Shown: positions 6,604 to 63,757 of the stretch, piece after piece
Numbering within the stretch: position 1 is the first letter of the stretch
How the letters are laid out: every line of letters starts with the position of its first letter
IMG/VR virus record: IMGVR_UViG_3300017917_003822
Coordinates: 206,630-270,629 of that record
Reading direction: 5' to 3' (one strand)
DNA: 64,000 bases
Notes under the pieces: model-generated
What the model was told of the DNA's origin: nothing
What the model saw: only the letters and a program-made list of their open reading frames with translations
Databases searched by the model: none
Made by a program: the position numbers and the translations under genes

Positions 6604-7683
6604 ATGAAATACGACATAAACATATTAAATAGCTATATTGATAATGGGCTGCTGGAAAAAAACCCACATCCAACATTACCTCTCGATATCTACAACTACT
6701 CCCGGGAGTGCCAATTTTCACGTCATTGGGATGAGATAACCCTCAACATGAGGGGCACAGTCTTAGACAGAGATGGAAATGTAGTAGCAAGAACATTTTC
6801 AAAATTCTTCAATCTGGAAGAACATCAACCCGAAGAAATTCCAAATGAATCATTTGACGTTTTTGAAAAAATGGATGGTTCACTGGGTATTTTATTTAAT
6901 TACAACGATCAGTGGATATTTGCAACTAAGGGATCATTCTCGTCAGATCAATCAATCAGAGGTAAGGAAATTTTGGAGAAGTACGACTATCAAAGTCTAG
7001 CGAAAGATTGCACATATTTATTCGAGATCATATATCCAGAAAATAGAATTGTCGTCAGCTACGATTTCGAAGATCTAGTACTATTAGCAATCATCAATAA
7101 CGAGGATGGCTATGAATATGACATACACTCGGAGGAGGCGCTTTCTGATGTACTGGATATCAAGGGTTTTAGAATTGTTAAAAAATACCATGGAGTTCAG
7201 GACTATAAGGAGCTTAAGAAAATCATAGATAACAATGCAGAGGGATTCGTCATCAGATTCAAATCTGGTTTCAGAATGAAGATCAAAGGGGAAGAGTATG
7301 TTAGACTCCATCGGCTTCTAACAAACTTCTCGAACATTGACATCTGGGAACTTTTGAAGAATGGGGAGGATCTTGGTAATTTTCTGGACAGAGTTCCTGA
7401 TGAATTTGATCTCTGGGTCAAGAATATTATCTCAGATCTAAGAAGACAGTACCTGGTAATCGAGGAATCAGCACATGAGGTCCATTCATCATTCTTTGTT
7501 GCGAGACCAGATTTTTCGAGAGAAGCGGGAAAGAAAGAATATGCTCTGTGGGTTAAAGAACAAGAAAAGAATTTGCAAGGTATATTATTTTGTCTGTATG
7601 ACGAGAAAAGGTATTCGGATCACATTTGGAAAATGATAAGACCGAAATACCAAAAACCATTTTGGAACAAAATTGAGGATTGA
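6604..7683 (+). CDS. T4 Rnl1-type RNA ligase
   Basis: CRG-like MRGTVLD, FSKFFNLEE, motif I EKMDGSLG, FEIIYPENRIV, EGFV, KIK. Confidence 0.9.
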   Translation: MKYDINILNSYIDNGLLEKNPHPTLPLDIYNYSRECQFSRHWDEITLNMRGTVLDRDGNVVARTFSKFFNLEEHQPEEIPNESFDVFEKMDGSLGILFNYNDQWIFATKGSFSSDQSIRGKEILEKYDYQSLAKDCTYLFEIIYPENRIVVSYDFEDLVLLAIINNEDGYEYDIHSEEALSDVLDIKGFRIVKKYHGVQDYKELKKIIDNNAEGFVIRFKSGFRMKIKGEEYVRLHRLLTNFSNIDIWELLKNGEDLGNFLDRVPDEFDLWVKNIISDLRRQYLVIEESAHEVHSSFFVARPDFSREAGKKEYALWVKEQEKNLQGILFCLYDEKRYSDHIWKMIRPKYQKPFWNKIED

Positions 7684-11060: not shown

Positions 11061-11729
11061 ATGAACAACTCAGCAGAATTTAGAAAATACGCTTTAAGTC
11101 AGGGTATAAGCTCGCTAACACTGGACTATCACGATAAACAAATCCAGGCATCAATGACTCCGATGATCCTTGAGGAAAGGGAAATGAGAGTCACCCAGAT
11201 GACTGTTTTTGATAGATTGATGATGGATAGAATCCTTTGGGTAGCTGGTCCGGTTAACGATAGAATGTCAACCATAGTTCAGGCTCAACTTATGTTCCTT
11301 GATTCCGTTGATGATAGGGATATTACTATGCACATTGACTCCCCCGGTGGGTCTGTTAAATCTGGTCTGAGTATGGTTGATGTTATGTCGTATATTAAAT
11401 CGGATATCCGAACAGTTAACACAGGGATGGCAGCTTCGATGGGATCAATTTTACTTGGAGCAGGAACTAAAGGAAAAAGATCGTCGTTAAGATTTAGTAA
11501 AGTTATGTTGCACCAATCCAGCGGTGGATTTAGTGGAAACATCCAGGATGCAGAAATCGACATGATAGAATGGAAAAAATACAATGAGATCCTGTTTGAG
11601 TTATTGGGTGAATATTGTGACAAACCAGCAGAACAAGTAATGCAAGATGCGACTAGGGATTTTTGGTTGAGTGCAGATGATGCTGTTGCTTATGGCATTA
11701 TCGACGAGGTAATCAGATCTAAAAAATAA
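11061..11729 (+). CDS. clpP: ATP-dependent Clp protease proteolytic subunit
   Basis: DSPGGSV, GMAASMG (Ser), MLHQ (His), RDFWL (Asp). Confidence 0.95.
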   Translation: MNNSAEFRKYALSQGISSLTLDYHDKQIQASMTPMILEEREMRVTQMTVFDRLMMDRILWVAGPVNDRMSTIVQAQLMFLDSVDDRDITMHIDSPGGSVKSGLSMVDVMSYIKSDIRTVNTGMAASMGSILLGAGTKGKRSSLRFSKVMLHQSSGGFSGNIQDAEIDMIEWKKYNEILFELLGEYCDKPAEQVMQDATRDFWLSADDAVAYGIIDEVIRSKK

Positions 11730-12280: not shown

Positions 12281-12571
12281 ATGGTAGAATTAAAAGAAAA
12301 GAAAGAAATTTTGATCTGTGATTGCCACTCGACAGAACACCAGGTCGTGATATATTACAGTGAGGATGAGTTTGAGGATGGTAGAAAATACCCCATGTGT
12401 TATTTTCATATTCACTTAAACAAATTACCATTTCTGGAGAGACTGAGGTATGCGATCAAATACATATTCGGACGGAAGTCGAGATATGGGGCATTCGATG
12501 AATTTATCATTAACCCATCCGATGCTGATAAGTTACAGGATCTGGTTAATTATTTAAAACAAAAAGAATGA
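12281..12571 (+). CDS. hypothetical protein
   Basis: CDC.STEH motif; no function recognised. Confidence 0.7.
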   Translation: MVELKEKKEILICDCHSTEHQVVIYYSEDEFEDGRKYPMCYFHIHLNKLPFLERLRYAIKYIFGRKSRYGAFDEFIINPSDADKLQDLVNYLKQKE

Positions 12572-12795
12572 TCTGGAAAAGTATCGAAGAAGAAACTCCG
12601 GTTGCCTATGAAAGTGGTAACTGGGACGGACTAAGAAGCGAAGAAGTTCTGGTGTCTGATAAAGAAGGTAAATTGAACATAGCCCGAATGTATAAGGGCA
12701 CAATGGACGGATCTCACTTTAGACAATTCTATGACCATCGAGATTTTGAGATACCTGAAGTAACTCACTGGTGTAAAATTCCCATGCTACTTTAG
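12568..12795 (+). CDS. DUF551-like phage protein
   Basis: WKSIEEETP ... VTHWCKIP. Confidence 0.65.
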   Translation: MIWKSIEEETPVAYESGNWDGLRSEEVLVSDKEGKLNIARMYKGTMDGSHFRQFYDHRDFEIPEVTHWCKIPMLL

Positions 12796-12814
12796 TGCAT
12801 GGGAATTTTTTTTT
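12781..12814 (+). terminator. intrinsic terminator
   Basis: cccatgc/gcatggg stem followed by T-tract. Confidence 0.7.
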
Positions 12815-12823
12815 GATATATAG
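12815..12823 (+). promoter_or_regulatory. Class B (putative late) promoter RATATATA
   Basis: gatatatag 4 nt before ATG. Confidence 0.6.
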
Positions 12824-12826
12824 TTC

Positions 12827-13564
12827 ATGCTAAAATACCTAAAGGAATATCACGAATTTGAATATTCACAAGAAACAGATCTTAATGAGGGGTTTCTCGG
12901 TGACATCAAGGACATATGGAACAGCTTCATGAGACTAGTCGAAAAAATACTCAAGGAGAAGAAGGCTGGTCAGAAAACAAAGACACCAACAGTAAAAAAA
13001 CCTTCACCCCTGGAGGGTCAACATATGTTATATCTTCCGCATCAACAGGGACCATCCGGTGCTGTTAAATTGGTAGATGTTTATAGAGGTAAAAAGAAAC
13101 TCGATCCAAACGACAGAACAAAGCTACTTAAGAATATGCCATCATCGGATCCAGGCTATCAAAAAGTTTTAAAAGGTAACGATAGGGAGGCGGTAACTGC
13201 TTTTCTGAATTACCAAAAAAATACATGGGATAATTATCAAAAGGAAGCTCTATCAAAAATAAAACTACCAGAAAATAAGGTAGTTAAAAAAGCGATAGAT
13301 AAGCTACCAAATCCAAATTTTCCTAAAGAATTTTTAACCACTGTGGCTTATAAGGAATCGAGATTTGTTCCAAATCCACCAACAAACAAAACATATAGAG
13401 GACTATTTCAAATAGGTCCTTCTGCGTGGGCACAATTAAAAAGAATAAACCCGGAAAAATATAAAGGATCTCTCCCACCAATAGATCCTATCAAAAACAC
13501 CCAAGCGGGTCACGATTATCTTAAGTGGACCTACGAACAATTTGAAAAGGACGTAAGGGTATAA
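12827..13564 (+). CDS. circularly permuted lytic transglycosylase (SLT/GH23-like) with CTS-like leader
   Basis: AYKESRF, RGLFQI, NTQAGHDYL at C-end; YLPHQQG N-terminal. Confidence 0.8.
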   Translation: MLKYLKEYHEFEYSQETDLNEGFLGDIKDIWNSFMRLVEKILKEKKAGQKTKTPTVKKPSPLEGQHMLYLPHQQGPSGAVKLVDVYRGKKKLDPNDRTKLLKNMPSSDPGYQKVLKGNDREAVTAFLNYQKNTWDNYQKEALSKIKLPENKVVKKAIDKLPNPNFPKEFLTTVAYKESRFVPNPPTNKTYRGLFQIGPSAWAQLKRINPEKYKGSLPPIDPIKNTQAGHDYLKWTYEQFEKDVRV

Positions 13565-14143
13565 TTATTTTTTATCTTTTAGATTTGCTTTTGCTTGCTT
13601 GTATAGCGCTTTATCACCGACTTCGGTTGTTCTTCCGCCAGTCACAAAAGAATTAACTCTTGCCATGGCCCATTGCTGAGGAGTAGTTCCGGGAACATGA
13701 CCAGTTTTCCAAGCCGCATAGCCTCTAGCCCAAACTTTCTTTAATATACCAAGAGGGAATCCGGTCTTATCCGATTTCTTTTTAAGAGCCTTGTATACCG
13801 GACTATTTTTACCCATTGACGATTCTTGTAAAATTTCCTCCGTCAAATCATCATTTTCTATAAGGATATCCTCAAAAAGATTGTCTGGCAAGCCGAATGA
13901 ATCGAAATCCACTATATTCTTAGGTTCGAAGTTGTCACTTTCACCAAACATCTCCTTATACTTTTTCGTGTATTTAGATGCTTTGGTTGGAACAGGTTTA
14001 CCCTTTCCAGCTTTTCTGCTTTTATAGTCAGCATCCCATGGACCGTATGCTGATGAGTCATCATCTGCTTTGTGTCCGTGTTTTTTAATTTCTCTCTTCA
14101 TCACTTCCGGATTTCTGGTGAGATATTTCTTAGGTAATTTCAT
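13565..14143 (-). CDS. conserved T4-like phage protein of unknown function
   Basis: LKKKSDKTG...LKKVWARGYAAWKTGH.PGTTPQQWAMARVNSF block recalled from T4-like phages. Confidence 0.7.
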   Translation of the reverse strand: MKLPKKYLTRNPEVMKREIKKHGHKADDDSSAYGPWDADYKSRKAGKGKPVPTKASKYTKKYKEMFGESDNFEPKNIVDFDSFGLPDNLFEDILIENDDLTEEILQESSMGKNSPVYKALKKKSDKTGFPLGILKKVWARGYAAWKTGHVPGTTPQQWAMARVNSFVTGGRTTEVGDKALYKQAKANLKDKK

Positions 14144-16417: not shown

Positions 16418-17560
16418 ATGGAAAGAAAATTAGCAAGTATACAGAAAATAGGAAAAGTTCTGCCTATAGAGGGAGCAGATGCAATCGAGATGGTAATGGT
16501 TAACTCGTGGAAGGTCGTTTCTAAGAAGGATGAATTCAAGGAAGGTGACTATTGCGTTTATTTTGAAATTGATTCATTTCTTCCAATTAGAGAGGAATTT
16601 GAGTTCTTGAGAAAATCCTCCTATAGAAAGATGGGGGATCTTGAGGGATTCAGACTAAAAACCATAAAACTTAGAGGACAGGTTAGTCAGGGGCTTTGTT
16701 TACCAATCTCCATATTGGAGGGAGATGGTGAAATGAAAATTGGAATCAGCAAGCAACCTTGGGGAGATCAATTACAGCTTGGTCCTTATGACGATGCTCT
16801 TGTTATTCAAGAAGGAGTTGATGTCACAGAACATTTGGGAGTTGTTAAATTTGAACCACCTATACCGGCTGAACTTGCAGGAAAGGTTAAAGGAAATTTC
16901 CCTGGTTTCATCAGAAAAACAGACGAGGAAAGAATCCAGAATATGACGAAGCAATTTGAGGAGATGAAGTCACATCAATACTACATCACGGAAAAACTTG
17001 ACGGTAGTTCAGCAACTTACTATTTTAGAGACGGGGTTTTCGGTGTCTGTTCAAGAAACCTTGAGTTAGCGGATCCTGGAGAATTTGTACCTGGTACTAT
17101 CATTGGTGAAGATGGTGTCGAAAGACCCAAAAAAGAAAATACATTCTGGAAGGTTGCTAGAGAGCTAAAGATAGCAGAAAAACTAGGATCTCTTAATCAA
17201 AATTACGCAATCCAGGGGGAGCTTATTGGGGAAGGAGTGCAAGGAAATCCTTACAAGATCAAAGGACACACACTTAGAATATTTAATGTATTCAATATCG
17301 ATCAACAGGAGTATCTGGGACTTGATGAAATGAGGGATTTTCTTTCGAAGGTTAATGTTGACGATTCACCATTGGAATTGGTTCCTGTCATTGATGAAAA
17401 CTACAAGCTGCATGGAACCATCGAGGAAATTCTACAATATGCTGAGGGTAAATCAGTTCTTCATAATGAGGCCGAGAGAGAAGGAATTGTTATCAGAAAC
17501 AAAGACAAGAGCATCTCATTCAAGGCTATTTCTAATAAATTCTTGCTAAAGGAAAAATAG
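16418..17560 (+). CDS. RNA ligase, DRB0094 (Rnl2-like) family
   Basis: N-terminal MERKLASIQ..GADAIE module; EKLDGSS, CSRN, QGELIG, REGIV, KAIS. Confidence 0.9.
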   Translation: MERKLASIQKIGKVLPIEGADAIEMVMVNSWKVVSKKDEFKEGDYCVYFEIDSFLPIREEFEFLRKSSYRKMGDLEGFRLKTIKLRGQVSQGLCLPISILEGDGEMKIGISKQPWGDQLQLGPYDDALVIQEGVDVTEHLGVVKFEPPIPAELAGKVKGNFPGFIRKTDEERIQNMTKQFEEMKSHQYYITEKLDGSSATYYFRDGVFGVCSRNLELADPGEFVPGTIIGEDGVERPKKENTFWKVARELKIAEKLGSLNQNYAIQGELIGEGVQGNPYKIKGHTLRIFNVFNIDQQEYLGLDEMRDFLSKVNVDDSPLELVPVIDENYKLHGTIEEILQYAEGKSVLHNEAEREGIVIRNKDKSISFKAISNKFLLKEK

Positions 17561-52486: not shown

Positions 52487-52564
52487 AGTCAGGTGGCGGA
52501 ATTGGTAGCGCATTTCTCTATACCAACGAGAATCGGAGTGCAGGTTCGAATCCTGTCCTGACTA
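52487..52564 (+). ncRNA. tRNA-like element 4 (9-nt anticodon loop)
   Basis: agtcagg/cctgact; gcggaattggtagcgc; ttctc-tataccaac-gagaa; gcagg-TTCGAAT-cctgt. Confidence 0.75.
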
Positions 52565-52579
52565 CTAAAAATTGGAAGT

Positions 52580-55718: not shown

Positions 55719-56387
55719 TTATACTGAGTATTTCTTAGCGAGATTTGCAAGACCCTGAAATAATCCCTTCCAGTTTGGATCGAGTTTAATCAACTGATCC
55801 ATCGTAAAGTATGATGCGTTCTCCATCTGAAAATCCTCACCATTTCTTTTATAGACAGCAACAAATCCATTATATGCTCCTGGAGCAACTTTGAGATCCT
55901 GCTTTTTAACTTTATCAAAGGGAGAATGCCATTCAAAATTTAAAGCTTTCTGATCATACCCAACTGCAACATCAATAAAAACTGTTGGATAATATCGGTC
56001 ATCATATTTAGACTCCTGGGTTCTCGTAGCATACATCCAAACTCCAGCACCTTTTCTAGGTCCTGATGCTGACCAAGAAGCATCAGCCCATTTTTCAATC
56101 TTGAAAGTTGCAGGTTTTATTTGTCCCCATTCCGGTATTTTGAAATCCTTTCCACCATAAGCAGCAACTAAATTTTTGGTGTCCTGATAATATGCCTTGG
56201 ATTTATTCTTATCGGTGTAATACGGATCCTCATTAACTTTAGCCTGATCACCGCTTGCAAGCATATTCTCAACCTGAGATTTATAATCCGCAATGTCTGA
56301 AGTTTTTCCTTTTAATTCAGGAGCCTCCATTGCTTCCATTGATGCTGACTCGTTTAAAAAGTCATCAAATCTTAATAATTTATTCAT
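55719..56387 (-). CDS. hypothetical protein with CTS-like leader
   Basis: MNKLLRFDDFLNE-S. Confidence 0.75.
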   Translation of the reverse strand: MNKLLRFDDFLNESASMEAMEAPELKGKTSDIADYKSQVENMLASGDQAKVNEDPYYTDKNKSKAYYQDTKNLVAAYGGKDFKIPEWGQIKPATFKIEKWADASWSASGPRKGAGVWMYATRTQESKYDDRYYPTVFIDVAVGYDQKALNFEWHSPFDKVKKQDLKVAPGAYNGFVAVYKRNGEDFQMENASYFTMDQLIKLDPNWKGLFQGLANLAKKYSV

Positions 56388-56391
56388 TTTA

Positions 56392-56748
56392 TTATTTATT
56401 TTGTCTAATTAATAATTCCCCTAAGACCTCGATTTTACCAACAATCTCCTGGAAATCAACCTGTGATATGTTCATATCATTTTTTGTTGATGAGTAAAGA
56501 ACATCAAGAAGATCTTTATACTCCTTCTCTGCCTCTGCTCTGTCAAATTTCCCCTCCTTTGCTTTCTTATAAGTCGATAGTTTAACCTTAAAGTGGTGAT
56601 ATGTTAACATCGCATCGCCGCCTTTTTCTTTAGCTGAGTCAGCTATTTTGGTAGCTCCTGCCAATCTAGTAGCAGAAAATTCTTCGAACGTCTCCTTAGT
56701 TTTGGATTCGTTTAAAAATTGGTTGTATTTTTTAATTTGTTCGCTCAT
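56392..56748 (-). CDS. hypothetical protein with CTS-like leader
   Basis: MSEQIKKYNQFLNE-S; class B motif at 56753-56761. Confidence 0.75.
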   Translation of the reverse strand: MSEQIKKYNQFLNESKTKETFEEFSATRLAGATKIADSAKEKGGDAMLTYHHFKVKLSTYKKAKEGKFDRAEAEKEYKDLLDVLYSSTKNDMNISQVDFQEIVGKIEVLGELLIRQNK

Positions 56749-56781
56749 ACATCTATATATCAATAAAAAAAACCAGTTTTA

Positions 56782-56813
56782 TTTTTTTATTCCGAGATAA
56801 TATCTTATATTTG
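56782..56813 (+). promoter_or_regulatory. Class A promoter
   Basis: T-tract-attccg-N11-TATATTTG. Confidence 0.75.
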
Positions 56814-56838
56814 TATAACAAATTTAAAATATTTTAAA

Positions 56839-57258
56839 ATGTACGTAAAAAAACCAGTAAACAGCGCAGCACCATCTAATAACAAGATCTGGACAGCTGA
56901 AGAAGATGCTATTTTAAGAAAAATGGCTGAAGAAAAATCAACAACAGCAAAAATTGCTAAAGCTCTAGGAAGAACTAAAGCTTCAATTTGGGGCAGAAAA
57001 AGCATTCTAGGAATCAAAACTCGTTTGCTATCTTCTAAAGGACACAACATTTCGGTTCCAACAACTCTTTCTACAAAAAACAGAGGAGCAAAATCGAAAG
57101 TGAACAGCTCACCGAAAAACGTGGTTAAGGTCTCTACTCAATCAAACAAATCACAGGCTGCAGTTGAAAAATCTTATCAGGGTATGTGTTACGAGTTTGA
57201 TATGCTATCTAAATTAGCTAAACAAACTGGTGCTAAAATCGTTGTTACCTTCGAATAA
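56839..57258 (+). CDS. Myb/GcrA-like HTH DNA-binding protein
   Basis: WTAEEDAILRKM......IAKALGRTKASI..R; basic S/T/K tail. Confidence 0.7.
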   Translation: MYVKKPVNSAAPSNNKIWTAEEDAILRKMAEEKSTTAKIAKALGRTKASIWGRKSILGIKTRLLSSKGHNISVPTTLSTKNRGAKSKVNSSPKNVVKVSTQSNKSQAAVEKSYQGMCYEFDMLSKLAKQTGAKIVVTFE

Positions 57259-57279
57259 GAAGGAACGAATAATCTTATT

Positions 57280-57324
57280 AAAAAGCCTGATGAGTCATCA
57301 GGCTTTTTTTATGTAGATATATAA
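57280..57324 (+). terminator. terminator followed by class B promoter
   Basis: aagcctgatg-agt-catcaggctt plus T-tract; gatatataa at 57316-57324. Confidence 0.75.
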
Positions 57325-57327
57325 AGC

Positions 57328-57789
57328 ATGTTTAAATTTATTAGAACCTTCGACGATTACGACACGCCAATTTTACCATCCGGATTAAGTATAACTAAAG
57401 ACGGAATAGAAAATTTGGCAAATAGTTTTTTGGAAGAGATAGAGAAGAATTATAATATAGGGAGAAATAAGCCATTCGACAAAAAGATTGGGAACTGTGC
57501 TTGGTTCACCGAATCATTTTACGAGTGGAGCGAGATTAATAATGTACCAGCTAGAATCATATATTTTCCAGAAACTCAAAAGGCCAAGGATGCACACATA
57601 GCAATTCTGATTGGCGGATATGTTCTGGACTTCACACATAAACAATTTAGTAAGGATCCCAAAGATAATTTCTCAATCAACAAAGTTGACCACTATAAAA
57701 AATTCGGATATGATGTTGATGATGCGGAGGTGGTCGACGAATTTCCTTCCTGGATTGATGACATTCACCCGCCAAAAGAAAAAAAATAA
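57328..57789 (+). CDS. papain/transglutaminase-fold protein with CTS-like leader
   Basis: GNCAWF ... HIAI ... LDFT..QF (Cys-His-Asp). Confidence 0.6.
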   Translation: MFKFIRTFDDYDTPILPSGLSITKDGIENLANSFLEEIEKNYNIGRNKPFDKKIGNCAWFTESFYEWSEINNVPARIIYFPETQKAKDAHIAILIGGYVLDFTHKQFSKDPKDNFSINKVDHYKKFGYDVDDAEVVDEFPSWIDDIHPPKEKK

Positions 57790-57794
57790 GACAC

Positions 57795-58610
57795 ATGAAA
57801 CACATTCAACTATTCGAATGGTTTTTGAAAACAAGAGAACCGGAGGAAATTCTTAGATGGGACAAACCAATCAACAACCCATTGAAGCAGGGAAGATTTA
57901 AAGACGTTATTGTCAATTCAAAGAGAGTTTCTCCGAGAACAACCAAGGGGGTAAGAACCCTAGCAAGAGAAATGTATGAATTTCCAAACGATAAAGAATT
58001 ACTTAGAGATGTTAAATACATGACTAATTTATCAGACCGAGAAATTTCCACTCTGGTTGACTATGGACTTTCTCATATGCCCGCTAAAATAGACCTTATG
58101 GATTATGATACAATCCTTATACCCCAAACTGGATCTAAGATAGTTTATAAAATTCTAGATTCACTTTATAACGTTGAGACTGAATTTGGATCAAATAAGA
58201 AAACTCAGTGGAACCCTAAAGTTTATGATAACGCCTTCATAAAAAGAAAATGGAAAGACGTTGAGTGGAACATGGATTTAATTAACAAGACCGGTGAGAA
58301 AACTAAAAACGATGTTCTTAATATGATCGAGAGGCTAAAAACACAAAAAGGCAACGAGGATGCTAAATTAGGGGGAAATGTGATACCAATCTATAGAAAA
58401 TTTCTTGATAAGTTCATGGATATTAATCCAGAAATAGCTAAGGATCTGGCTGGAAAAAGGGTAATTATTCTGGACGATTTTGTAACAGATGGTGCGACTA
58501 GAAAACAGATGAGAAATTTAACGATTCCATATGGACCAAAGTCAATTCTAAATTTAGCTTTATTCCACATAAGAGGTCAAAAGAGAGAATCAGACCCTGA
58601 CTACGAATAA
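57795..58610 (+). CDS. type I phosphoribosyltransferase with CTS-like leader
   Basis: GKRVIILDDFVTDGAT PRPP loop; MKHIQLFEWF start. Confidence 0.75.
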   Translation: MKHIQLFEWFLKTREPEEILRWDKPINNPLKQGRFKDVIVNSKRVSPRTTKGVRTLAREMYEFPNDKELLRDVKYMTNLSDREISTLVDYGLSHMPAKIDLMDYDTILIPQTGSKIVYKILDSLYNVETEFGSNKKTQWNPKVYDNAFIKRKWKDVEWNMDLINKTGEKTKNDVLNMIERLKTQKGNEDAKLGGNVIPIYRKFLDKFMDINPEIAKDLAGKRVIILDDFVTDGATRKQMRNLTIPYGPKSILNLALFHIRGQKRESDPDYE

Positions 58611-58639
58611 TCGATATATACAATAAATAAAAACTCAAT

Positions 58640-58930
58640 ATGTTACAAGGAAATAATTGCTATCGTTTAGTTGCAAGTACGAATTATCAACCAGGTGCTA
58701 CTGGTGCCACTGCGGGACCAACCTTAATGGAAGGACCAATTACATTAGTTTATGTTGCTCCTGGAGCAGCGGTCTTGGATTTTTATGATGCCAAGAATAA
58801 TAGGAATACGATTAATATAGGATCTACCAATACAGGTGTGCTTTTACCAATTACTGTTACCGCAACAGGATCAAGTTTATCTGGTACCATCTTTGGATTC
58901 TCACAAGGTGGAATCTATGCTAATAGATAA
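58640..58930 (+). CDS. small beta-rich putative virion protein
   Basis: G/T-rich, LPITV; class B motif at 58613-58621. Confidence 0.5.
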   Translation: MLQGNNCYRLVASTNYQPGATGATAGPTLMEGPITLVYVAPGAAVLDFYDAKNNRNTINIGSTNTGVLLPITVTATGSSLSGTIFGFSQGGIYANR

Positions 58931-59749
58931 TTAGGCTAGATTTTTAGCCCAAGATGCTATATTTAAGGAGGCAAGAGTTCTAGGTCCTAGAGTTTTCTTA
59001 AACTCCTTGATATTATCTTTTAGTGTTTGTATTCCAGCACTTGCATTATCATCTGCACTAAATATATTACCGCCAGGGACGTATTTGTTAAATCCAGGTT
59101 GACTTAGAGCATACAGACCTTTATATTTATTATTACCTGCCTTAGGATTAAATCCTGATTCTATCTTAGCTACAGTTGTTGCAAAATCAAAGGGAACACC
59201 GAACTTGGAGCTGTATTTCTGTATGGTTTGTTTAACTGCGGAGTTTTGTGGTTTATTGATATCGATTTTAGCCTGTTCTCCCTGTTTTTTCCATTTTTCT
59301 TTCCACATATTTAAGAAGAGAGCAGCAGCTGTTTTTTGATCTCCAGCATCAAGAGCTTTGATGATTGATGTCTTAACTTGAGGTTTATCGCTAGGAATAT
59401 TCTTTACTAGATTTGCGTATTTAACACCTCCCTTAGTTTTAATTGTGTCAGGTGCAAGTTTACCTGTACCCAAAGAAGCCTCTATTAAACCCTTAGCACC
59501 AGCTATTCCCTGTTGGTGCTGCATATAAAGTGTGAAATCATCGTTACCTGGGATTGGATTGAAGTCGGCAGGTAAAAAGGCTCCTTGTGAAGTATCGGAT
59601 ACCCCGGTGTCATCCGCCTTTTGTTTCTTAAGCTCTTCCGCTTTTTTCTGTGCTTCTATTTCCATATTACCCAGCATCGGAGCTATAGCTGACAAGAAAC
59701 TTCCAGTTCCTTCATTGATAAATTCTTCAAAAGATGATATTTTCTTCAT
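58931..59749 (-). CDS. second circularly permuted lytic transglycosylase with CTS-like leader
   Basis: YMQHQQG N-terminal; AKIESGF, KGLY, NASAGI C-terminal; class B motif at 59769-59777. Confidence 0.78.
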   Translation of the reverse strand: MKKISSFEEFINEGTGSFLSAIAPMLGNMEIEAQKKAEELKKQKADDTGVSDTSQGAFLPADFNPIPGNDDFTLYMQHQQGIAGAKGLIEASLGTGKLAPDTIKTKGGVKYANLVKNIPSDKPQVKTSIIKALDAGDQKTAAALFLNMWKEKWKKQGEQAKIDINKPQNSAVKQTIQKYSSKFGVPFDFATTVAKIESGFNPKAGNNKYKGLYALSQPGFNKYVPGGNIFSADDNASAGIQTLKDNIKEFKKTLGPRTLASLNIASWAKNLA

Positions 59750-59778
59750 ATGATGTTTATTGATTGTACTATATATCC

Positions 59779-59810
59779 AAAAAAAGACGGAAGTAGCGAA
59801 TTTCCGTCTT
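59779..59810 (-). terminator. intrinsic terminator (minus strand)
   Basis: aagacggaa/ttccgtctt 9-bp stem plus T-tract on minus. Confidence 0.8.
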
Positions 59811-59881
59811 ATATGTAGTCGTAACTACTCCGGTCCTAAAATGGGGCACTGAGCCCGCCGGATATGTTTTAATGTGATAGT

Positions 59882-60334
59882 TTATTCTTCGTGAGCCAAA
59901 ACTCTTTTTAATCTACCCAATTCTCTAACCATGTCCTTATTTGTGTTATCCTCCAATACTATTTTGGGTGATTGTGATTCTTTATTTCCGACGGTATCCA
60001 GAACGATAGCATTTCTTTTTCTTGTTATACCCATATTCATGATCTTTTGGATCTGAATTGCAATCTCTTCCTCTCTTTCTATGATTTTGTTCGTACATTC
60101 TCTCTGTCCTCTGATTAATTCAAGATTAAGACGGGAAGTTTCGTTTTGTAATACACGTATTTGTGCTGATTGCTTCTCCAATGTGACATTAACATCATCA
60201 GGTGTACCTTTGATTGCTTTAATCAAATCGCTACCATTAGTCATTAGCACGATTGAAAATAGCAATAACAATAATGCAATCACTCTTTGTTGAGGTGTAA
60301 ATTTACCTAATATTTCTGATACGTAACTTAGCAT
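59882..60334 (-). CDS. TM plus coiled-coil protein
   Basis: N-terminal hydrophobic helix, heptad region. Confidence 0.65.
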   Translation of the reverse strand: MLSYVSEILGKFTPQQRVIALLLLLFSIVLMTNGSDLIKAIKGTPDDVNVTLEKQSAQIRVLQNETSRLNLELIRGQRECTNKIIEREEEIAIQIQKIMNMGITRKRNAIVLDTVGNKESQSPKIVLEDNTNKDMVRELGRLKRVLAHEE

Positions 60335-60474
60335 AATTATTTCTTATTTATATTAAAATCCCTCGGACCTCATTTTTTATTCTTAAATTTGTCAACAATG
60401 AAAAATAATAAAATTACAAAAAATGGTGAGAGTATAATAAGAACAGACTCGGAGTGATACATTTCTGTGAATTA

Positions 60475-60828
60475 TTAACGTCTTAGAAATGCAAGATCTC
60501 TACCGCCTCTTTCACCTCCGTGCATCTTAGCCATTACAAGACCAAATAAAAACGCGTTAAACGCTTCGTAATGATCCGTAGCGTAAATTACATTGTTATC
60601 TATTGCTACACCTGATTGTCCGTCTGTGGTGTGTCTAATTGATAAATTTGGATATAATCTCTTAACATCCGATTCCAATTTAGCTCTCATTGCTTCTTGT
60701 TCTCTGTTTGCAACCGTATGATCCGCTGGAGAAGCAACATCGGTAGTTCCAGTAGATGTAGTCTGTGGTAGATTAGACATCTCAGGGGATTCGTTTACGA
60801 AGTTCTCGTATACTTTTAAATTTTCCAT
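60475..60828 (-). CDS. hypothetical protein with CTS-like leader
   Basis: MENLKVYENFVNE-S. Confidence 0.7.
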   Translation of the reverse strand: MENLKVYENFVNESPEMSNLPQTTSTGTTDVASPADHTVANREQEAMRAKLESDVKRLYPNLSIRHTTDGQSGVAIDNNVIYATDHYEAFNAFLFGLVMAKMHGGERGGRDLAFLRR

Positions 60829-60847
60829 CTCAAAAATCTGATATTTT

Positions 60848-61153
60848 TTATAAGTTCCAAGCAGGATTTGCAATTATGAGGATATCTCCCTCTATTCTAG
60901 GTAACTCCTTTGTTGAGTGATAATCATCATACTTTATCTGGTCAGGATAAAATTTCTTCCCATTAAAAACTATATAGTTATCCTCGGATCTTTCACCCTC
61001 ACCTCTAAGACTAAAATCATTTGTTTTTAGGACATCATGAGTTGCAGATTTAATGGTGGGTTTACCGAAGATGCTGTCCCAGAAGCTCTCGTTTACATCA
61101 GCATTTTCTGTAACTACTCCTCTGAAATCTTCGTATTTTTTAATGTTTTCCAT
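60848..61153 (-). CDS. hypothetical protein with CTS-like leader
   Basis: MENIKKYEDF; class B motif at 61168-61176. Confidence 0.7.
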   Translation of the reverse strand: MENIKKYEDFRGVVTENADVNESFWDSIFGKPTIKSATHDVLKTNDFSLRGEGERSEDNYIVFNGKKFYPDQIKYDDYHSTKELPRIEGDILIIANPAWNL

Positions 61154-61200
61154 GTGATATTTTTTCTTTATATATCACATAACAAATAGAGAAAGATTGA

Positions 61201-62190
61201 TTAGATGAGATCCTTGAGATTGTTATATCTTCTAAGGTTGGAGTATTTTTTAATCTCATCCTCCGAGAGATATGGGTTATCCTGAAACATATGAATCTGG
61301 TCCTCAATCGGTATTTTCTTCCAGACCTTAGAAAGGCCCATCCCGTAATCACCCTTCTCCTTTTTCATCGAGTTAAAGACCACTTTCAAGGTCTTCTCAC
61401 TTACTACGTTTCCTTTAAAGTTGAGTTGTCTTAGTGTTAAATTGATAGGTGCACCTTTTACAGATATTAACTGATTGAACGAAACATCTAGCCAATCAGT
61501 GATTTCCGGACATCCAATTAAATCCGTGAGTTGATTATAGGAGCATTTGAGAGATTCCATTTTTTTAACTCTTAGCCCAGAAAGTGATGTGATTGCATTT
61601 TTATTGCAGCTCATTGATTCAACCTTTATTGGTGCTCCTTCTAGACTTTTGAGTTCATTATATGAGCAATCGTAGTTATCAAGGACTTTAACCGGTCCAC
61701 CCTTAAGGGACTTAAGCTTATTATGTGACCCATCAAATCTTCTACATTTTTTTGGAAAATTCGGCCAGAATTTTGAAACCTTGCAAGATCTGATTGATAT
61801 CGAGGAAATGAATGAAAATTTGATACCCCTAGCTATCTTGGCATCTTTCTCTCTTTGTTTTTTCTCCTTAGCGCTTTCTTTATTCCATGTCCTGGAAGAT
61901 AAACCCCAGTCATCGGAGTACATGTGATCGATTACCACACCTCCATTTTCAGAATCAATATACCAGTTATTACTGGAACCATCAAGCAATCTGATCCCGT
62001 CCTCGGTTAGGCTATCACTTTTTCTGTATTTGTCGAATAAAAAATCCGATGCTGCAATGATCTGTGCATGTTGTTCAGGATGGTCCTTACTCATGCCAGA
62101 TATGAGATTCTCCAGTGCGGTTTTTTGTGAAGAGGTCCACTTAAATCTTCTCTCAATCATATCTACAATTCTAATAATGAATATCATCAT
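61201..62190 (-). CDS. leucine-rich-repeat protein (phage SLEGAP type)
   Basis: Repeats such as CSYNELKSLEGAP and CSYNQLTDLIGCP. Confidence 0.8.
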   Translation of the reverse strand: MMIFIIRIVDMIERRFKWTSSQKTALENLISGMSKDHPEQHAQIIAASDFLFDKYRKSDSLTEDGIRLLDGSSNNWYIDSENGGVVIDHMYSDDWGLSSRTWNKESAKEKKQREKDAKIARGIKFSFISSISIRSCKVSKFWPNFPKKCRRFDGSHNKLKSLKGGPVKVLDNYDCSYNELKSLEGAPIKVESMSCNKNAITSLSGLRVKKMESLKCSYNQLTDLIGCPEITDWLDVSFNQLISVKGAPINLTLRQLNFKGNVVSEKTLKVVFNSMKKEKGDYGMGLSKVWKKIPIEDQIHMFQDNPYLSEDEIKKYSNLRRYNNLKDLI

Positions 62191-62234
62191 TATAGATAAT
62201 TGGGATGCGTGGGTTTCGGTAAAAAAATAGTGAT

Positions 62235-62741
62235 TTATTCTAGTGCGTGATTCTCCCAGTGGCCTTCAGGATAACTTGGATTCACGTAACAGATGTAATC
62301 TGTCCAGCCATTTCCTTTATCATCTTTCCAGTGGTTATAGACTGCATCCTCGTCCATGAATGGCACGTAACCAGACTTCTTAAGCAACTCAACGAACCAT
62401 TTTAGTAGATCCCGTTTGAATTCCTCAGGTTTCTCTCCTTCCAACGAGATCTGACATGCGATCCAAGGTGTTCTCATGGCTTTACCTGGTGAGTCCGGAT
62501 CGCCATAAGCAAGTAACTCTGGATAAAACACCATTGTGGTTTTATTAACCCAGTCCCTGTTCTTAGCATCAGGATTGATCTCAAATGGAGTCTTAACTTC
62601 CAAAACACCCTCATCAACAACCTCACATTCTGGATTTTGTAACATTTTATCGACCAATTCCTTGATCTCAGCATCAAGTTCAGCCGATACGTTGATCAAC
62701 GACTCGTTGATGAAGCTATTGAAATTTAATATTCTGATCAT
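62235..62741 (-). CDS. hypothetical protein with CTS-like leader
   Basis: MIRILNFNSFINE-S. Confidence 0.7.
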   Translation of the reverse strand: MIRILNFNSFINESLINVSAELDAEIKELVDKMLQNPECEVVDEGVLEVKTPFEINPDAKNRDWVNKTTMVFYPELLAYGDPDSPGKAMRTPWIACQISLEGEKPEEFKRDLLKWFVELLKKSGYVPFMDEDAVYNHWKDDKGNGWTDYICYVNPSYPEGHWENHALE

Positions 62742-62742
62742 C

Positions 62743-63030
62743 TTATTTCTTTTTATCAGTTTTAAACTTTTTGATGAATCTTTCTCTTCTACCCTTGTCC
62801 TCGCCTAAACCTGTGCCTGATATCATGTCCCTAACATCATATTTTTCTTTATGATCCTTATTAGCTTTCACGTATGCTGCTAGTTTTTCGGCATCTATGT
62901 CGTTGTCGTCGATGAAATTCTGAATTGAATTCTGTCCGGATCCAGTGATCTGATGAATATAAACAGCCTCCATTGAAACTTTCTCATTCAGAAAGTTCTC
63001 GTATAGTTCAATGTGTTTCATGTTTTTCAA
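62743..63030 (-). CDS. hypothetical protein with CTS-like leader
   Basis: MKHIELYENFLNE-K. Confidence 0.7.
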   Translation of the reverse strand: MKNMKHIELYENFLNEKVSMEAVYIHQITGSGQNSIQNFIDDNDIDAEKLAAYVKANKDHKEKYDVRDMISGTGLGEDKGRRERFIKKFKTDKKK

Positions 63031-63044
63031 TTTTATATTTATGT

Positions 63045-63290
63045 TTATTCTATTACTCCATCGGTTCCATCCAGACTATCATGAACTGAATTAAGGCCAT
63101 TCACTGCTGAGGTTAATTTGGAATACATCCATGGGGACAGCTGTTGTCCTTTATTTACTCTATCCAGAATCATGTTGGCGTAATCTGAGATTCGTTCCAA
63201 ATCTCCTTTTGCCATCCTATTTAACCCATCGACAACCTCCTGTGGGGTTCTTTCAGCTGAAAATTCCTCTAGTAGTTTAATATTTTTCAT
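63045..63290 (-). CDS. hypothetical protein with CTS-like leader
   Basis: MKNIKLLEEFSAE; MAK..L.....A...L...W..SK.T.A pattern. Confidence 0.7.
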   Translation of the reverse strand: MKNIKLLEEFSAERTPQEVVDGLNRMAKGDLERISDYANMILDRVNKGQQLSPWMYSKLTSAVNGLNSVHDSLDGTDGVIE

Positions 63291-63292
63291 GA

Positions 63293-63757
63293 TTATGATT
63301 TGTGATTTAATGTTTCAAAAACAACCTTCTGTTCCTGTAGATAAACGTCAGTGTCAACATAAACCATACCCAGATGATTCTCTTTGTCACGATCACTGAT
63401 GTCGGTGATGGAAAGCAAGGTTACATTCACTTTCTCACCTTTTCTACCCTGCATCATTAGCTGGTAGTCATTCAACCAATACTGGCTGTTGTGAATTCTA
63501 TATGTTGGACGATCTGGTGAATTTCCATTCGGTCTCACATCGAAATACTGATAGTGAACAAACATCGTACTTCCATAGAATGAAAAAACTCTTCTCTCTG
63601 CTTCATCTACAGTTGCTGCAGTTTTGGGCATGAGAGATGCAAAGAAAGCAGGATCTATCTCATTCTCAACATCAAGCTCCTTCGGATCAAATCTGTCGAT
63701 TGTCATCTCATTTAGAACGCTACCTGAGAAGTCCTCGTATAGTGCAATGTGTTTCAT
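63293..63757 (-). CDS. hypothetical protein with CTS-like leader
   Basis: MKHIALYEDFSGSVLNE; class B motif at 63766-63774. Confidence 0.7.
   Translation of the reverse strand: MKHIALYEDFSGSVLNEMTIDRFDPKELDVENEIDPAFFASLMPKTAATVDEAERRVFSFYGSTMFVHYQYFDVRPNGNSPDRPTYRIHNSQYWLNDYQLMMQGRKGEKVNVTLLSITDISDRDKENHLGMVYVDTDVYLQEQKVVFETLNHKS

What the first reader, a model, noticed from the sequence alone, without database searches (positions are those of the whole stretch)
12827..13564. Circularly permuted lytic transglycosylase, copy 1
Seen: the order is YLPHQQG-SGA ... AYKES ... GLFQI ... NTQAGHDYL, then stop. Established: SLT/GH23 enzymes run ES, GLxQ, A/GxxYL, then the AYNxG / YLAHxxG motif. Inference: motif IV and its helices have moved to the N-terminus. 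With the CTS-like leader, this may be a head-packaged muralytic enzyme that is activated or released on ejection.
Basis: partly seen in the sequence, partly recalled or inferred. Interest (0 to 1): 0.62.

Follow-up and report, generated by a model that had tools for sequence, protein, structure and literature searches.

The report
Circularly permuted phage lytic transglycosylase
A 245-residue protein of an uncultivated T4-like jumbo phage is a cell-wall-cutting enzyme (lytic transglycosylase) whose last third has moved to the front of the chain, and it carries a T4-style head-targeting leader, so it is probably packed into the phage head and delivered on infection.

Summary
ORF 12827..13564 (+) has Y-L-P-H-Q-Q-G at residues 69-75, then E177-S178, G-L-F-Q (192-195), A-G-H-D-Y-L (227-232), and stops 13 residues later. 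Pfam SLT covers only residues 162-242, which is profile positions 9-86 of 117.

The missing C-terminal lobe is residues 64-146. That segment matches, at profile level, the part that follows the catalytic core in normally ordered relatives: phi12 P5, phiR1-37 g083 and 61 metagenomic clusters. Those relatives in turn align with phiKZ gp144 (Y-L-A-H-F-F-G) and MltC (A-Y-N-G-G), which is motif IV.

AlphaFold gives one confident body for residues 64-245. A split-chain prediction packs Y69 against the catalytic helix (score 0.79; best control 0.00). No permutation-aware 3D superposition could be run.

The permuted form is a family: 96 close homologues and 31 clusters at 50% identity, including copy 2 at 58931..59749 (-).

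A leader like the T4 capsid-targeting sequence, ending in [LIV]-N-E, is on 25 of 31 permuted clusters and 0 of 61 canonical ones. It also starts 17 to 26 other ORFs of this 270-kb phage, which encodes gp21-type protease and gp23-type capsid genes. Head packaging is inferred, not shown.

Verdict: a new variant of a known kind.

The parts
12778..12814 (+). Terminator-like hairpin (10-bp stem, 12778-12787 pairing with 12797-12806) followed by a T run. It overlaps the stop codon of the upstream ORF (12568..12795).
   Evidence: Read directly from the sequence. The simple scan did not list it because its loop is 9 nt. A similar hairpin plus T run precedes copy 2.
12815..12823 (+). G-A-T-A-T-A-T-A-G motif, 3 nt before the start codon. 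Candidate phage (late?) promoter or regulatory element.
   Evidence: The same 9-mer or its 8-mer core lies upstream of copy 2, the tail sheath gene and several leader-bearing ORFs. Its function is not tested.
12827..13564 (+). Complete gene: permuted SLT/GH23 lytic transglycosylase precursor, 245 aa.
12827..12889 (+). Residues 1-21: acidic CTS-like leader ending in L19-N20-E21, the predicted prohead-protease cleavage site.
   Evidence: E21 is invariant and N20 is at least 90% conserved in the family. The leader HMM and a regex find the same N-terminus on 17-26 other ORFs, against 0.5 expected. T4 CTS sequence from PMC8442874. Leader pI 4.6.
12890..13015 (+). Residues 22-63: Lys-rich basic linker with one amphipathic helix (residues 30-48). 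Low model confidence.
   Evidence: pLDDT 35-66 except for the helix. Linker pI 9.9.
13016..13264 (+). Residues 64-146: the relocated C-terminal lobe of the SLT fold (the 'N-module'), five helices.
   Evidence: Profile matches to the post-core segment of canonical relatives. pLDDT above 95. Packs on the core.
13031..13051 (+). Y69-L-P-H-Q-Q-G75: the motif IV equivalent (A-Y-N-x-G / Y-L-A-H-x-x-G).
   Evidence: Y69, H72, Q73, Q74 and G75 are invariant. Aligned by transitivity to gp144 Y-L-A-H-F-F-G and MltC A-Y-N-G-G.
13265..13306 (+). Residues 147-160: short turn plus the helix that corresponds to the first helix of a canonical SLT domain. This is where the old N- and C-termini are joined.
   Evidence: VIA-align starts at model residues 144-151, matching Slt70 451 and P. 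aeruginosa Slt 475. Canonical relatives such as phi12 P5 end at the equivalent of about residue 144.
13307..13561 (+). Residues 161-245: SLT catalytic core (motifs I-III). The chain ends 13 residues after motif III.
13355..13360 (+). E177-S178: motif I, with the predicted catalytic glutamate.
   Evidence: Aligned with E478-S479 of Slt70. Invariant in the family.
13400..13411 (+). G192-L-F-Q195: motif II.
   Evidence: G192, L193 and Q195 invariant. Aligned with G-L-M-Q of Slt70.
13505..13522 (+). A227-G-H-D-Y-L232: motif III helix.
58931..59749 (-). Copy 2: paralogue of 272 aa with the same permuted order and a 13-residue leader ending in I-N-E. Motif II is divergent (G-L-Y-A-L).
   Evidence: tblastn and BLASTP 3e-19. 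N-module HMM at residues 73-165, E 2e-14. Pfam SLT 175-252 = profile 2-85.

Best explanation
The gene encodes a family-1-type (GH23, SLT) lytic transglycosylase whose catalytic domain is circularly permuted. The C-terminal lobe of the lysozyme-like fold (motif IV, here Y-L-P-H-Q-Q-G, and the helices after it) is encoded first, as residues 64-146. A 3-residue turn joins what were the old C- and N-termini. The catalytic core follows: the E177-S178 helix, G-L-F-Q and the A-G-H-D-Y-L helix. The chain then ends where a canonical enzyme would enter motif IV. The folded domain should be an ordinary SLT cleft, with E177 as the single acid/base that cleaves MurNAc-GlcNAc bonds to 1,6-anhydro products.

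The protein is made as a precursor. It has a 21-residue acidic leader like the T4 capsid-targeting sequence, then a basic linker. The most likely life history is:
- late synthesis;
- incorporation into the prohead core through the leader;
- removal of the leader after L-N-E21 by the phage's gp21-type (S77/S80) protease;
- storage of the basic 25.8-kDa mature enzyme with the DNA;
- release through the tail at infection, where it opens the peptidoglycan locally.

How far each step is established:
- Shown here: the motif order, the homology of the two halves to canonical enzymes, family-wide conservation, and the co-occurrence of leader and permutation.
- Predicted by models: a single compact domain with the H-Q-Q-G helix packed on the catalytic helix.
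- Inferred: enzyme activity, packaging, cleavage, and action at entry.

My separate odds: permutation 0.9; active transglycosylase 0.7; leader-mediated head packaging with cleavage 0.6; action on the wall at entry 0.4.
For: Motif order and truncation of the SLT profile.

Homology of residues 58-160 to the segment after the core in canonical proteins:
- phi12 P5: Y-L-V-H-Q-Q-G at residue 178, after T-E-S at 93 and G-L-F-Q at 111.
- phiR1-37 g083.
- BLASTP 1e-7 and 3e-7; HMM 1.3e-7 and 5.7e-11; hhalign 96.2%, E 2.1e-9.

Putting the two halves back in canonical order gives one colinear alignment across the junction. Scores are 115 and 148, against 78 and 91 in native order; shuffles give about 30 +/- 5.

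The canonical H-Q-Q-G profile hits phiKZ gp144 (3bkh) at 1.5e-13 and MltC, aligned through motif IV. Pfam SLT itself covers the H-Q-Q-G motif in g083, at profile positions up to 103.

Exhaustive search with the N-module profile found 105 clusters: 61 canonical order, 31 permuted, 12 N-module only, mostly short fragments, and 1 that the local re-scan could not classify.

Structure:
- AF2 pLDDT above 95 for residues 64-245, pTM 0.81.
- Only its own family gives a full-length match in the Atlas, TM 0.84; canonical SLTs stay below 0.4.
- Split-chain complex: ipSAE 0.79 against a best control of 0.00. This mark was reached by 58 of 80 solved complexes and 2 of 110 mismatched pairs. The runs share at least 86% of contacts and partner pLDDT is at least 89. 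Contacts include Y69/L68 with F169/V173, and A79/V80 with F239.

Leader:
- 17 ORFs match a strict pattern and 26 a relaxed one, out of 348 ORFs. Internal windows give 2 of 1389 and shuffled N-termini 0.5.
- The T4 CTS is M-K-T-Y-Q-E-F-I-A-E, and gp21 cleaves after Glu (PMC8442874, PMC5694885).
- The genome has an S77/S80 protease and a gp23 capsid gene.
- L-N-E followed by S occurs at residues 41-43 of the capsid protein, and the protease-scaffold ORF has seven [LIVM]-N-E sites.
- The leader is on 25 of 31 permuted clusters and 0 of 61 canonical ones.
- The mature protein has pI 9.8.

A separate canonical SLT with a membrane anchor is available as the endolysin.
Against: - The split-chain job had residues 147-160 in both chains, and its alignments were my own, so its calibration holds only roughly.
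- Classifying clusters as 'canonical' relies on a locally iterated core HMM. Pfam SLT recognised only 1 of the 7 canonical representatives I checked; the rest were verified by eye through E-S and G-x-x-Q motifs.
- The gene lies among non-structural genes (ClpP-like, RNA ligases), not in the head module.
- The T4 late promoter T-A-T-A-A-A-T-A is absent upstream.
- A 25.8-kDa folded enzyme leaving through a tail tube and acting in the periplasm has no precedent that I know of among T4-like phages.
- The link between leader and permutation may only reflect one common ancestor.
- There is no cultured relative: no hit in 50,697 phage records.
Confidence: 0.6

Rival explanations
1. A permuted, active transglycosylase that is not a head-internal ejection protein. 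It would act in lysis, beside the canonical SLT, or sit on the tail or baseplate. The shared N-terminal motif would then be a general propeptide or assembly tag, or a translation-related signal of this phage group.
For: The gene is not in the head module and is flanked by ClpP-like, DUF5824 and RNA-ligase genes; this synteny is kept in a 434-kb relative. PHROG matches of the core include endolysin, tail and tail-fibre families. T4-like phages normally breach the wall with a baseplate lysozyme (general knowledge). Neither copy has a signal peptide, but that is also true of many endolysins.
Against: The leader closely resembles the T4 CTS and ends in the same [LIV]-N-E tripeptide that punctuates the capsid propeptide and the protease-scaffold protein. 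Leader-bearing ORFs flank the protease and capsid genes. A canonical SLT with a membrane anchor already fits the endolysin role. The mature protein is basic, like the T4 internal proteins (PMC8442874).
Confidence: 0.25
2. The protein is no longer an enzyme. It would be a peptidoglycan-binding or purely structural core or scaffold component that kept an SLT-like shape.
For: Copy 2 has lost the Gln of motif II (G-L-Y-A-L). Permutation can accompany a change of function. No activity data exist.
Against: In copy 1 and its family, E177, S178, G192, L193, Q195 and the motif IV residues are invariant over sequences down to 42% identity. All 31 permuted cluster representatives keep E-S. That pattern is typical of selection on catalysis.
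Confidence: 0.1
3. Not a true permutation. Residues 64-146 would be an unrelated helical domain that shares a short motif by convergence, attached to a C-terminally truncated SLT core.
For: The fragment folded alone matched no lysozyme lobe. Pairwise BLASTP alignments cover only about 40 residues.
Against: Profile matches to canonical proteins extend over profile positions 9-80 (about 70 residues). Library-wide E-values reach 1e-11, and the match always sits directly after the core, with a median gap of 12 residues. Re-ordered halves align colinearly across the junction. The segment is predicted to pack on the catalytic helix.
Confidence: 0.05

Closest known systems
H-Q-Q-G / Y-L-A-H-x-x-G type SLT enzymes in canonical order: cystovirus phi12 P5 muramidase, the SLT domain of Yersinia phage phiR1-37 g083, and phiKZ gp144 (PDB 3BKH)
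   Same: The catalytic motifs are the same (E-S, G-L-[FY]-Q, the D-P...N...A helix). The motif IV variant is the same: Y-L-x-H-Q-Q-G followed by G-x-x-x-[LI], then N-M..P, then F-L-x-x-W. Both halves are detectably homologous.
   Different: In those proteins the H-Q-Q-G lobe follows the core. Here it precedes the core, and the chain ends after motif III. They lack the CTS-like leader (0 of 61 canonical clusters carry it). gp144 and phi12 P5 have an N-terminal peptidoglycan-binding domain instead.
E. coli Slt70, MltC and MltE (family 1 lytic transglycosylases, GH23)
   Different: Motif IV is A-Y-N-x-G and lies C-terminal to the core. They are periplasmic or lipoprotein housekeeping enzymes with accessory domains. 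Sequence identity is only 15-22%.
T4 internal proteins IPI, IPII, IPIII and Alt (CTS-bearing head cargo)
   Same: A short N-terminal leader of the type aromatic-x-acidic-F-I-x-E, removed after Glu by the prohead protease. The cargo is basic. There are many unrelated cargo proteins behind one conserved leader (PMC3012670, PMC8442874, PMC5694885).
   Different: As far as I know (my own knowledge, not tested here), no T4 internal protein is a muralytic enzyme. The leader here is longer (13-21 residues) and ends in [LIV]-N-E. Packaging is not demonstrated.
T7 gp16 N-terminal transglycosylase domain (ejected internal core protein)
   Different: gp16 is a protein of about 1,300 residues from a podovirus ejectosome, with a canonical-order SLT domain. 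This protein has 245 residues, is permuted, and belongs to a T4-like myovirus.

Membership tests
GH23 / family 1 lytic transglycosylase (Pfam SLT, PF01464) | Catalytic Glu in an E-S motif at the end of a helix (motif I) | tested here: met
   E177-S178 are invariant and align to E478-S479 of Slt70. Pfam SLT scores 39.8 bits against a cut-off of 21.3.
GH23 / family 1 lytic transglycosylase (Pfam SLT, PF01464) | Motif II G-L-x-Q and the motif III helix (A/G-x-x-Y-L) | tested here: met
   G192-L-F-Q195 and A227-G-H-D-Y-L232 are conserved and align to Slt70.
GH23 / family 1 lytic transglycosylase (Pfam SLT, PF01464) | Motif IV (A-Y-N-x-G or Y-L-A-H-x-x-G) located C-terminal to motif III | tested here: not met
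   The chain stops 13 residues after motif III, and only profile positions 9-86 of 117 are matched. The motif IV equivalent lies at residues 69-75, N-terminal to motif I.
GH23 / family 1 lytic transglycosylase (Pfam SLT, PF01464) | Complete lysozyme-like alpha fold with both lobes around the cleft | tested here: inconclusive
GH23 / family 1 lytic transglycosylase (Pfam SLT, PF01464) | Cleaves peptidoglycan to 1,6-anhydroMurNAc products | not testable with these tools
   Needs an enzyme assay.
H-Q-Q-G-type SLT subfamily (phi12 P5, phiR1-37 g083, metagenomic relatives) | Y-L-x-H-Q-Q-G followed by the G-x-x-x-[LI] helix, then N-M..P and the F-L-x-x-W helix | tested here: met
   BLASTP 1e-7 and 3e-7; hhalign 96.2%; hmmsearch down to 1e-11 library-wide; H-Q-Q-G in 59 of 61 canonical and 25 of 31 permuted clusters.
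H-Q-Q-G-type SLT subfamily (phi12 P5, phiR1-37 g083, metagenomic relatives) | Domain order: core, then the H-Q-Q-G lobe | tested here: not met
   The order is reversed in this protein, in copy 2 and in 31 clusters.
T4-type CTS-bearing internal head proteins | N-terminal leader resembling M-K-T-Y-Q-E-F-I-A-E | tested here: met
   The leader pattern is shared by 17 (strict) to 26 (relaxed) ORFs of the genome, against 0.5 expected. One ORF (genome 118764) begins M-N-I-K-S-F-D-D-F-I-A-E. T4 sequence from PMC8442874.
T4-type CTS-bearing internal head proteins | Leader ends at an (L/I)-x-E site for a gp21-type prohead protease that the phage encodes | tested here: met
   L19-N20-E21, with E21 invariant. 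PF03420 scores 29-30 bits, above its cut-off, and phrog_207 gives 4e-37. [LIVM]-N-E sites occur in the capsid propeptide and the protease-scaffold ORF. Cleavage after Glu in T4: PMC5694885.
T4-type CTS-bearing internal head proteins | Physically present in the mature head, with the leader removed | not testable with these tools
   The phage is uncultivated. This needs virion proteomics or a heterologous packaging test.
T7 gp16-type internal core transglycosylase | SLT domain at the N-terminus of a core protein of more than 1,000 residues | tested here: not met
   The protein has 245 residues. phrog_342 matches only weakly (E 0.013), and over the core only.

The most novel reading that the evidence does not exclude
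The permutation may be functionally coupled to head packaging. Moving motif IV to the front places the active-site cleft directly behind the leader and the basic linker. The enzyme would then be a tethered or occluded zymogen until the prohead protease trims it, or a domain able to unfold and refold from its N-terminus as it threads through the tail. On this reading the 17-26 leader-tagged ORFs are an expanded arsenal of injected cargo in a T4-like jumbo phage lineage, and two wall-cutting enzymes belong to it.
Probability: 0.15. Interest if true: 0.8.

Novelty: new variant of a known kind. Interest (0 to 1): 0.66.

Why it matters
Natural circular permutations are documented for several enzyme folds. 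One example is the NlpC/P60 peptidases (PMC6403190). Three full-text searches found no report of one for the SLT/GH23 or lysozyme-like transglycosylase fold.

This one is a conserved family, and its canonical-order sister sequences are in hand. That gives a clean natural system for asking how a lysozyme-like cleft tolerates re-threading.

It also shows why domain models under-call these proteins. Pfam sees about two thirds of the domain and nothing in the N-terminal 160 residues.

For phage biology, the near-perfect association of the permuted form with a T4-type capsid-targeting leader predicts a head-packaged wall-degrading enzyme in a T4-like phage. The genome-wide leader also gives a directly testable list of candidate ejected proteins for an uncultivated 270-kb phage.

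Tried and rejected
- tblastn of the whole protein against 50,697 phage records found no match at 1e-3, so there is no cultured relative.
- Foldseek of the full model against PDB and BFVD gave only weak rows (E at least 0.05). Transglycosylases headed both lists, but nothing reached significance. That is as expected if only half the fold is colinear.
- The N-module profile against PDB sequences found nothing meaningful. phi12 P5 alone against PDB also found nothing.
- Pfam, NCBIfam and PHROGs on residues 1-160 gave no family, except a 20-residue hit to phrog_22520. That hit turned out to be the first clue to the canonical order.
- The T4 late promoter T-A-T-A-A-A-T-A lies upstream of none of the 17 leader ORFs, so I rejected it as this phage's late signal.
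- Gp5_OB (PF06714) found nothing in the genome, but nothing in the control genomes either, so it is uninformative. Phage_lysozyme (PF00959) found no match in the genome.
- My narrow core HMM left 54 of the 105 hits unclassified, so I replaced it with an iterated one. Pfam SLT confirmed only 1 of the 7 canonical representatives I checked; the others were checked by eye.
- The careful maximum-likelihood tree did not finish in time, so only the quick tree is reported.
- The reads tools were not used. No alternative genetic code was needed.
Full report
**What is there**

The ORF at 12827..13564 (+) encodes 245 residues.
- Y69-L-P-H-Q-Q-G75;
- E177-S178;
- G192-L-F-Q195;
- A227-G-H-D-Y-L232;
- the stop, 13 residues later.

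Pfam SLT (PF01464) matches residues 162-242 to profile positions 9-86 of 117 (E 3.7e-10). The last quarter of the profile has nothing to match, and Pfam finds nothing in residues 1-160. A family profile aligns residues 159-238 with Slt70 463-543, which places E177-S178 on the catalytic E478-S479.

A word search found 96 full-length homologues of about 240 aa, at 42-94% identity, on contigs of up to 434 kb. In a 57-sequence alignment H66, Y69, H72, Q73, Q74, G75, E177, S178, G192, L193 and Q195 are invariant.

A paralogue with the same order, copy 2, lies at 58931..59749 (-). It has 272 aa and is 35% identical to copy 1.

**Is the N-terminal segment the missing C-terminal lobe? Sequence evidence**

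The first clue came from PHROG 22520. Copy 2's core hits profile positions 7-92, while copy 1's H-Q-Q-G stretch hits positions 97-116. In that family, therefore, the core comes first.

A tblastn search then found two annotated phage proteins in the canonical order:
- Cystovirus phi12 P5 muramidase has T-E-S at residue 93, G-L-F-Q at 111 and Y-L-V-H-Q-Q-G at 178.
- The SLT domain of Yersinia phage phiR1-37 g083 has Y-L-A-H-Q-Q-G directly after the core.

The match of residues 58-160 to these two proteins:

| Test | phi12 P5 | phiR1-37 g083 |
|---|---|---|
| BLASTP | 1e-7 | 3e-7 |
| HMM of the N-module, hit downstream of the core | 1.3e-7 | 5.7e-11 |
| Alignment score, halves re-ordered as 147-245 + 58-146 | 115 | 148 |
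| Alignment score, native order | 78 | 91 |
| Alignment score, shuffled sequence | 30 +/- 5 | 33 +/- 6 |

The re-ordering was done for analysis only. It gives one colinear alignment across the junction in both proteins.

hhalign of the N-module alignment against five canonical H-Q-Q-G proteins gives 96.2% probability and E 2.1e-9. The profile of those canonical proteins hits phiKZ gp144 (3bkh) at 1.5e-13 and MltC at about 1e-6. These alignments run through the motif: Y-L-A-H-Q-Q-G lies on gp144's Y-L-A-H-F-F-G and on MltC's A-Y-N-G-G. Pfam SLT itself extends over the H-Q-Q-G motif in g083, covering residues 126-231 as profile positions 2-103. H-Q-Q-G is therefore a variant of motif IV.

**How wide is the permuted family?**

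The novelty claim depends on where relatives are and are not found, so I used the one exhaustive search. The N-module profile went against 1.84 billion cluster representatives and returned 105 proteins at E <= 1e-3. I classified them locally with an iterated core HMM:

| Class | Clusters | Detail |
|---|---|---|
| Canonical order (core, then lobe) | 61 | median gap 12 residues; median tail 36 |
| Permuted order (lobe, then core) | 31 | median gap 7 residues; median tail 19 |
| N-module only | 12 | mostly short fragments |
| Not classified | 1 | the local re-scan found neither module |

In the canonical proteins the match spans profile positions 9-80. That is the whole lobe, not just the motif. 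Some of their lobes are strikingly close to ours; the helix F-L-N-Y-W-Q-N-K-W is one example.

One caveat applies. Pfam SLT recognised only 1 of the 7 canonical representatives I tested. In the others I confirmed E-S and G-x-x-Q upstream by eye.

The permuted clusters comprise the copy 1 type (about 245 aa), the copy 2 type (about 290-300 aa), and proteins of 509-570 aa. The long ones carry extra N-terminal domains (PG_binding_1; a weak GDSL-like match) with the permuted module at their C-terminus.

In a quick maximum-likelihood tree, 27 of 28 permuted rows fall in one group nested among canonical ones (SH-aLRT 80; midpoint root only; the careful search did not finish). The exception, P0206, has a signal peptide and membrane segments instead of the leader, and may be a second origin.

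**Structure**

AlphaFold2 with the family alignment gives mean pLDDT 86 and pTM 0.81, with residues 64-245 above 95.

- Foldseek finds only weak rows.
- In the ESM Atlas only the protein's own viral cluster matches end to end (TM 0.84). Canonical SLT clusters reach TM below 0.4, over residues about 143-240.

This is what a permutation looks like to sequential aligners, but it is not a direct proof.

A split-chain prediction used residues 147-245 as one chain and 58-160 as the other, each with my own alignment. It scored ipSAE 0.79 against a best control of 0.00.
- This mark was reached by 58 of 80 solved complexes and 2 of 110 mismatched pairs.
- The runs share at least 86% of contacts, and the partner's pLDDT is at least 89.
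- The confident contacts put L68/Y69 against F169/V173 of the catalytic helix, and A79/V80 against F239 of the motif III helix.
- Two cautions apply. Residues 147-160 were present in both chains, and the calibration holds only roughly with my alignments.

**The leader**

The window is the last 64 kb of a 270,629-bp virus record that is 99% complete by CheckV.

The genome encodes:
- a gp23-type capsid protein;
- a gp21-type protease (PF03420 above its cut-off, a PF20034 hit just below its cut-off, and phrog_207 at 4e-37), fused to a repeat-rich scaffold-like tail;
- a tail sheath.

It is therefore a T4-superfamily jumbo phage.

Copy 1 starts with a 21-residue acidic leader that ends in L-N-E. 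E21 is invariant in the family.

The same kind of N-terminus is aromatic-x-x-aromatic followed, within 14 residues, by [LIVM]-N-E. It starts 17 of 348 gene-like ORFs by a strict pattern and 26 by a relaxed one. By comparison it occurs in 2 of 1389 internal windows and in 0.5 shuffled N-termini on average.

Several of these ORFs flank the protease and capsid genes. Eight lie at window 55.7-63.8 kb on the minus strand, and copy 2 is one of them.

The T4 capsid-targeting sequence is M-K-T-Y-Q-E-F-I-A-E and is cut once by the prohead protease (PMC8442874). T4 internal proteins share only this sequence (PMC3012670). gp21 cleaves after Glu, for example at I-T-E and L-T-E in Alt (PMC5694885). One ORF here begins M-N-I-K-S-F-D-D-F-I-A-E.

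The capsid protein has L-N-E followed by S at residues 41-43, and the protease-scaffold ORF has seven [LIVM]-N-E sites.

Among the cluster representatives the leader is on 25 of 31 permuted proteins and 0 of 61 canonical ones. Three of the six exceptions are N-terminally truncated fragments, and one has a leader that the regex missed.

The predicted mature proteins are basic and lack cysteine: 25.8 kDa and pI 9.8 for copy 1, pI 9.5 for copy 2.

A third SLT gene lies outside the window at genome 155379-155900. It is canonical, with A-Y-N-T-G and an N-terminal membrane anchor, and it fits the endolysin role.

**Interpretation**

The permutation is well supported by sequence. The models are consistent with it, and it is conserved across a family; I put it at 0.9.

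The conserved catalytic residues argue for an active transglycosylase (0.7).

Head packaging through the leader, with cleavage after E21, is a reasoned inference from the T4 paradigm and the genome-wide pattern (0.6).

Action on the wall at entry is the natural job for such cargo, by analogy with T7 gp16, but it is speculative for a myovirus (0.4).

Points against:
- the gene sits among non-structural genes, a synteny conserved in a 434-kb relative;
- the classic T4 late promoter is absent;
- the link between leader and permutation may simply reflect one ancestor.

**Novelty**

Three full-text searches found no report of a circularly permuted SLT/GH23 or lysozyme-like transglycosylase. The hits concerned permuted genomes, NlpC/P60 peptidases or unrelated folds. 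I rate this a new variant of a known kind.

Noticed in passing
window 55719..63757 (- strand) and genome-wide (e.g. G000:C1 42507, 49805, 50949, 56767, 59044, 118764, 119291, 141305): 17 (strict pattern) to 26 (relaxed pattern) ORFs start with a T4-CTS-like leader of the type M-K-x-I-K-x-[FY]-E-x-F...[LIV]-N-E. Eight lie in a row at the right end of the window: 55719..56387, 56392..56763, 58931..59749, 60475..60873, 60848..61153, 62235..62741, 62743..63030 and 63293..63757. None of those tested has a Pfam family. Together they are a predicted set of head-packaged cargo proteins.
   Followed up: partly
window 12815..12823; upstream of copy 2, starting at about window 59776 (- strand); 31 sites in the genome: The 8-mer A-T-A-T-A-T-A-G, often preceded by G, lies just upstream of the tail sheath gene, both permuted SLT genes and at least six other leader-bearing ORFs, often directly after a terminator hairpin. 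It is a candidate late promoter or regulatory motif, and it appears in place of the T4 late promoter T-A-T-A-A-A-T-A, which is rare in this genome. In copy 1 it ends only 3 nt before the ATG, which is odd for a promoter.
   Followed up: partly
G000:C1:46011-47960 (outside the window; L007:3612-5558): The prohead protease (S77/S80-like, residues about 19-182) is fused to a tail of about 450 residues. The tail carries about a dozen tandem Y-S-E-Y-L-A-E-N-L-D-like repeats and seven [LIVM]-N-E sites. It looks like a protease-scaffold fusion.
   Followed up: partly
G000:C1:155379-155900 (outside the window): A third SLT gene of 173 aa in canonical order (E-T, G-P-M-Q, A-Y-N-T-G) with an N-terminal hydrophobic anchor. 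It is the likely (SAR-type?) endolysin of the phage.
   Followed up: partly
protein P0206 (573 aa) from the exhaustive search: A permuted SLT module without the CTS-like leader. It has a signal peptide and membrane segments, then the H-Q-Q-G lobe, then the core. It groups with canonical sequences in the quick tree, so it may be an independent second permutation.
   Followed up: partly
proteins P0131, P0134, P0138, P0146, P0168 and about 30 related clusters: A large canonical-order subgroup has a Cys-rich insert and C-G-H-H-Q-L in place of G-L-x-Q. Pfam SLT does not detect it at E <= 0.01. Its C-terminal lobe is the closest canonical match to the N-module studied here.
   Followed up: no
window 52487..52565 (+): ARAGORN calls a tRNA-Tyr with anticodon ATA, which is unusual because tRNA-Tyr normally has GTA. 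It was not examined further.
   Followed up: no
window 11061..11729 (+), 13565..14143 (-), 6604..7683 (+), 16418..17560 (+): Neighbouring genes are a ClpP-like protease, a DUF5824 protein and two RNA ligases (Rnl1/gp63-like and Rnl2-like). The order ClpP ... SLT ... DUF5824 is conserved in a 434-kb metagenomic relative.
   Followed up: partly
window 61201..62190 (-): A 329-aa ORF with leucine-rich-repeat-like periodicity (repeated ...N-x-L-x-S-L-x-G-x-P...) lies inside the cluster of leader-bearing genes. It has only weak PHROG matches of unknown function.
   Followed up: no
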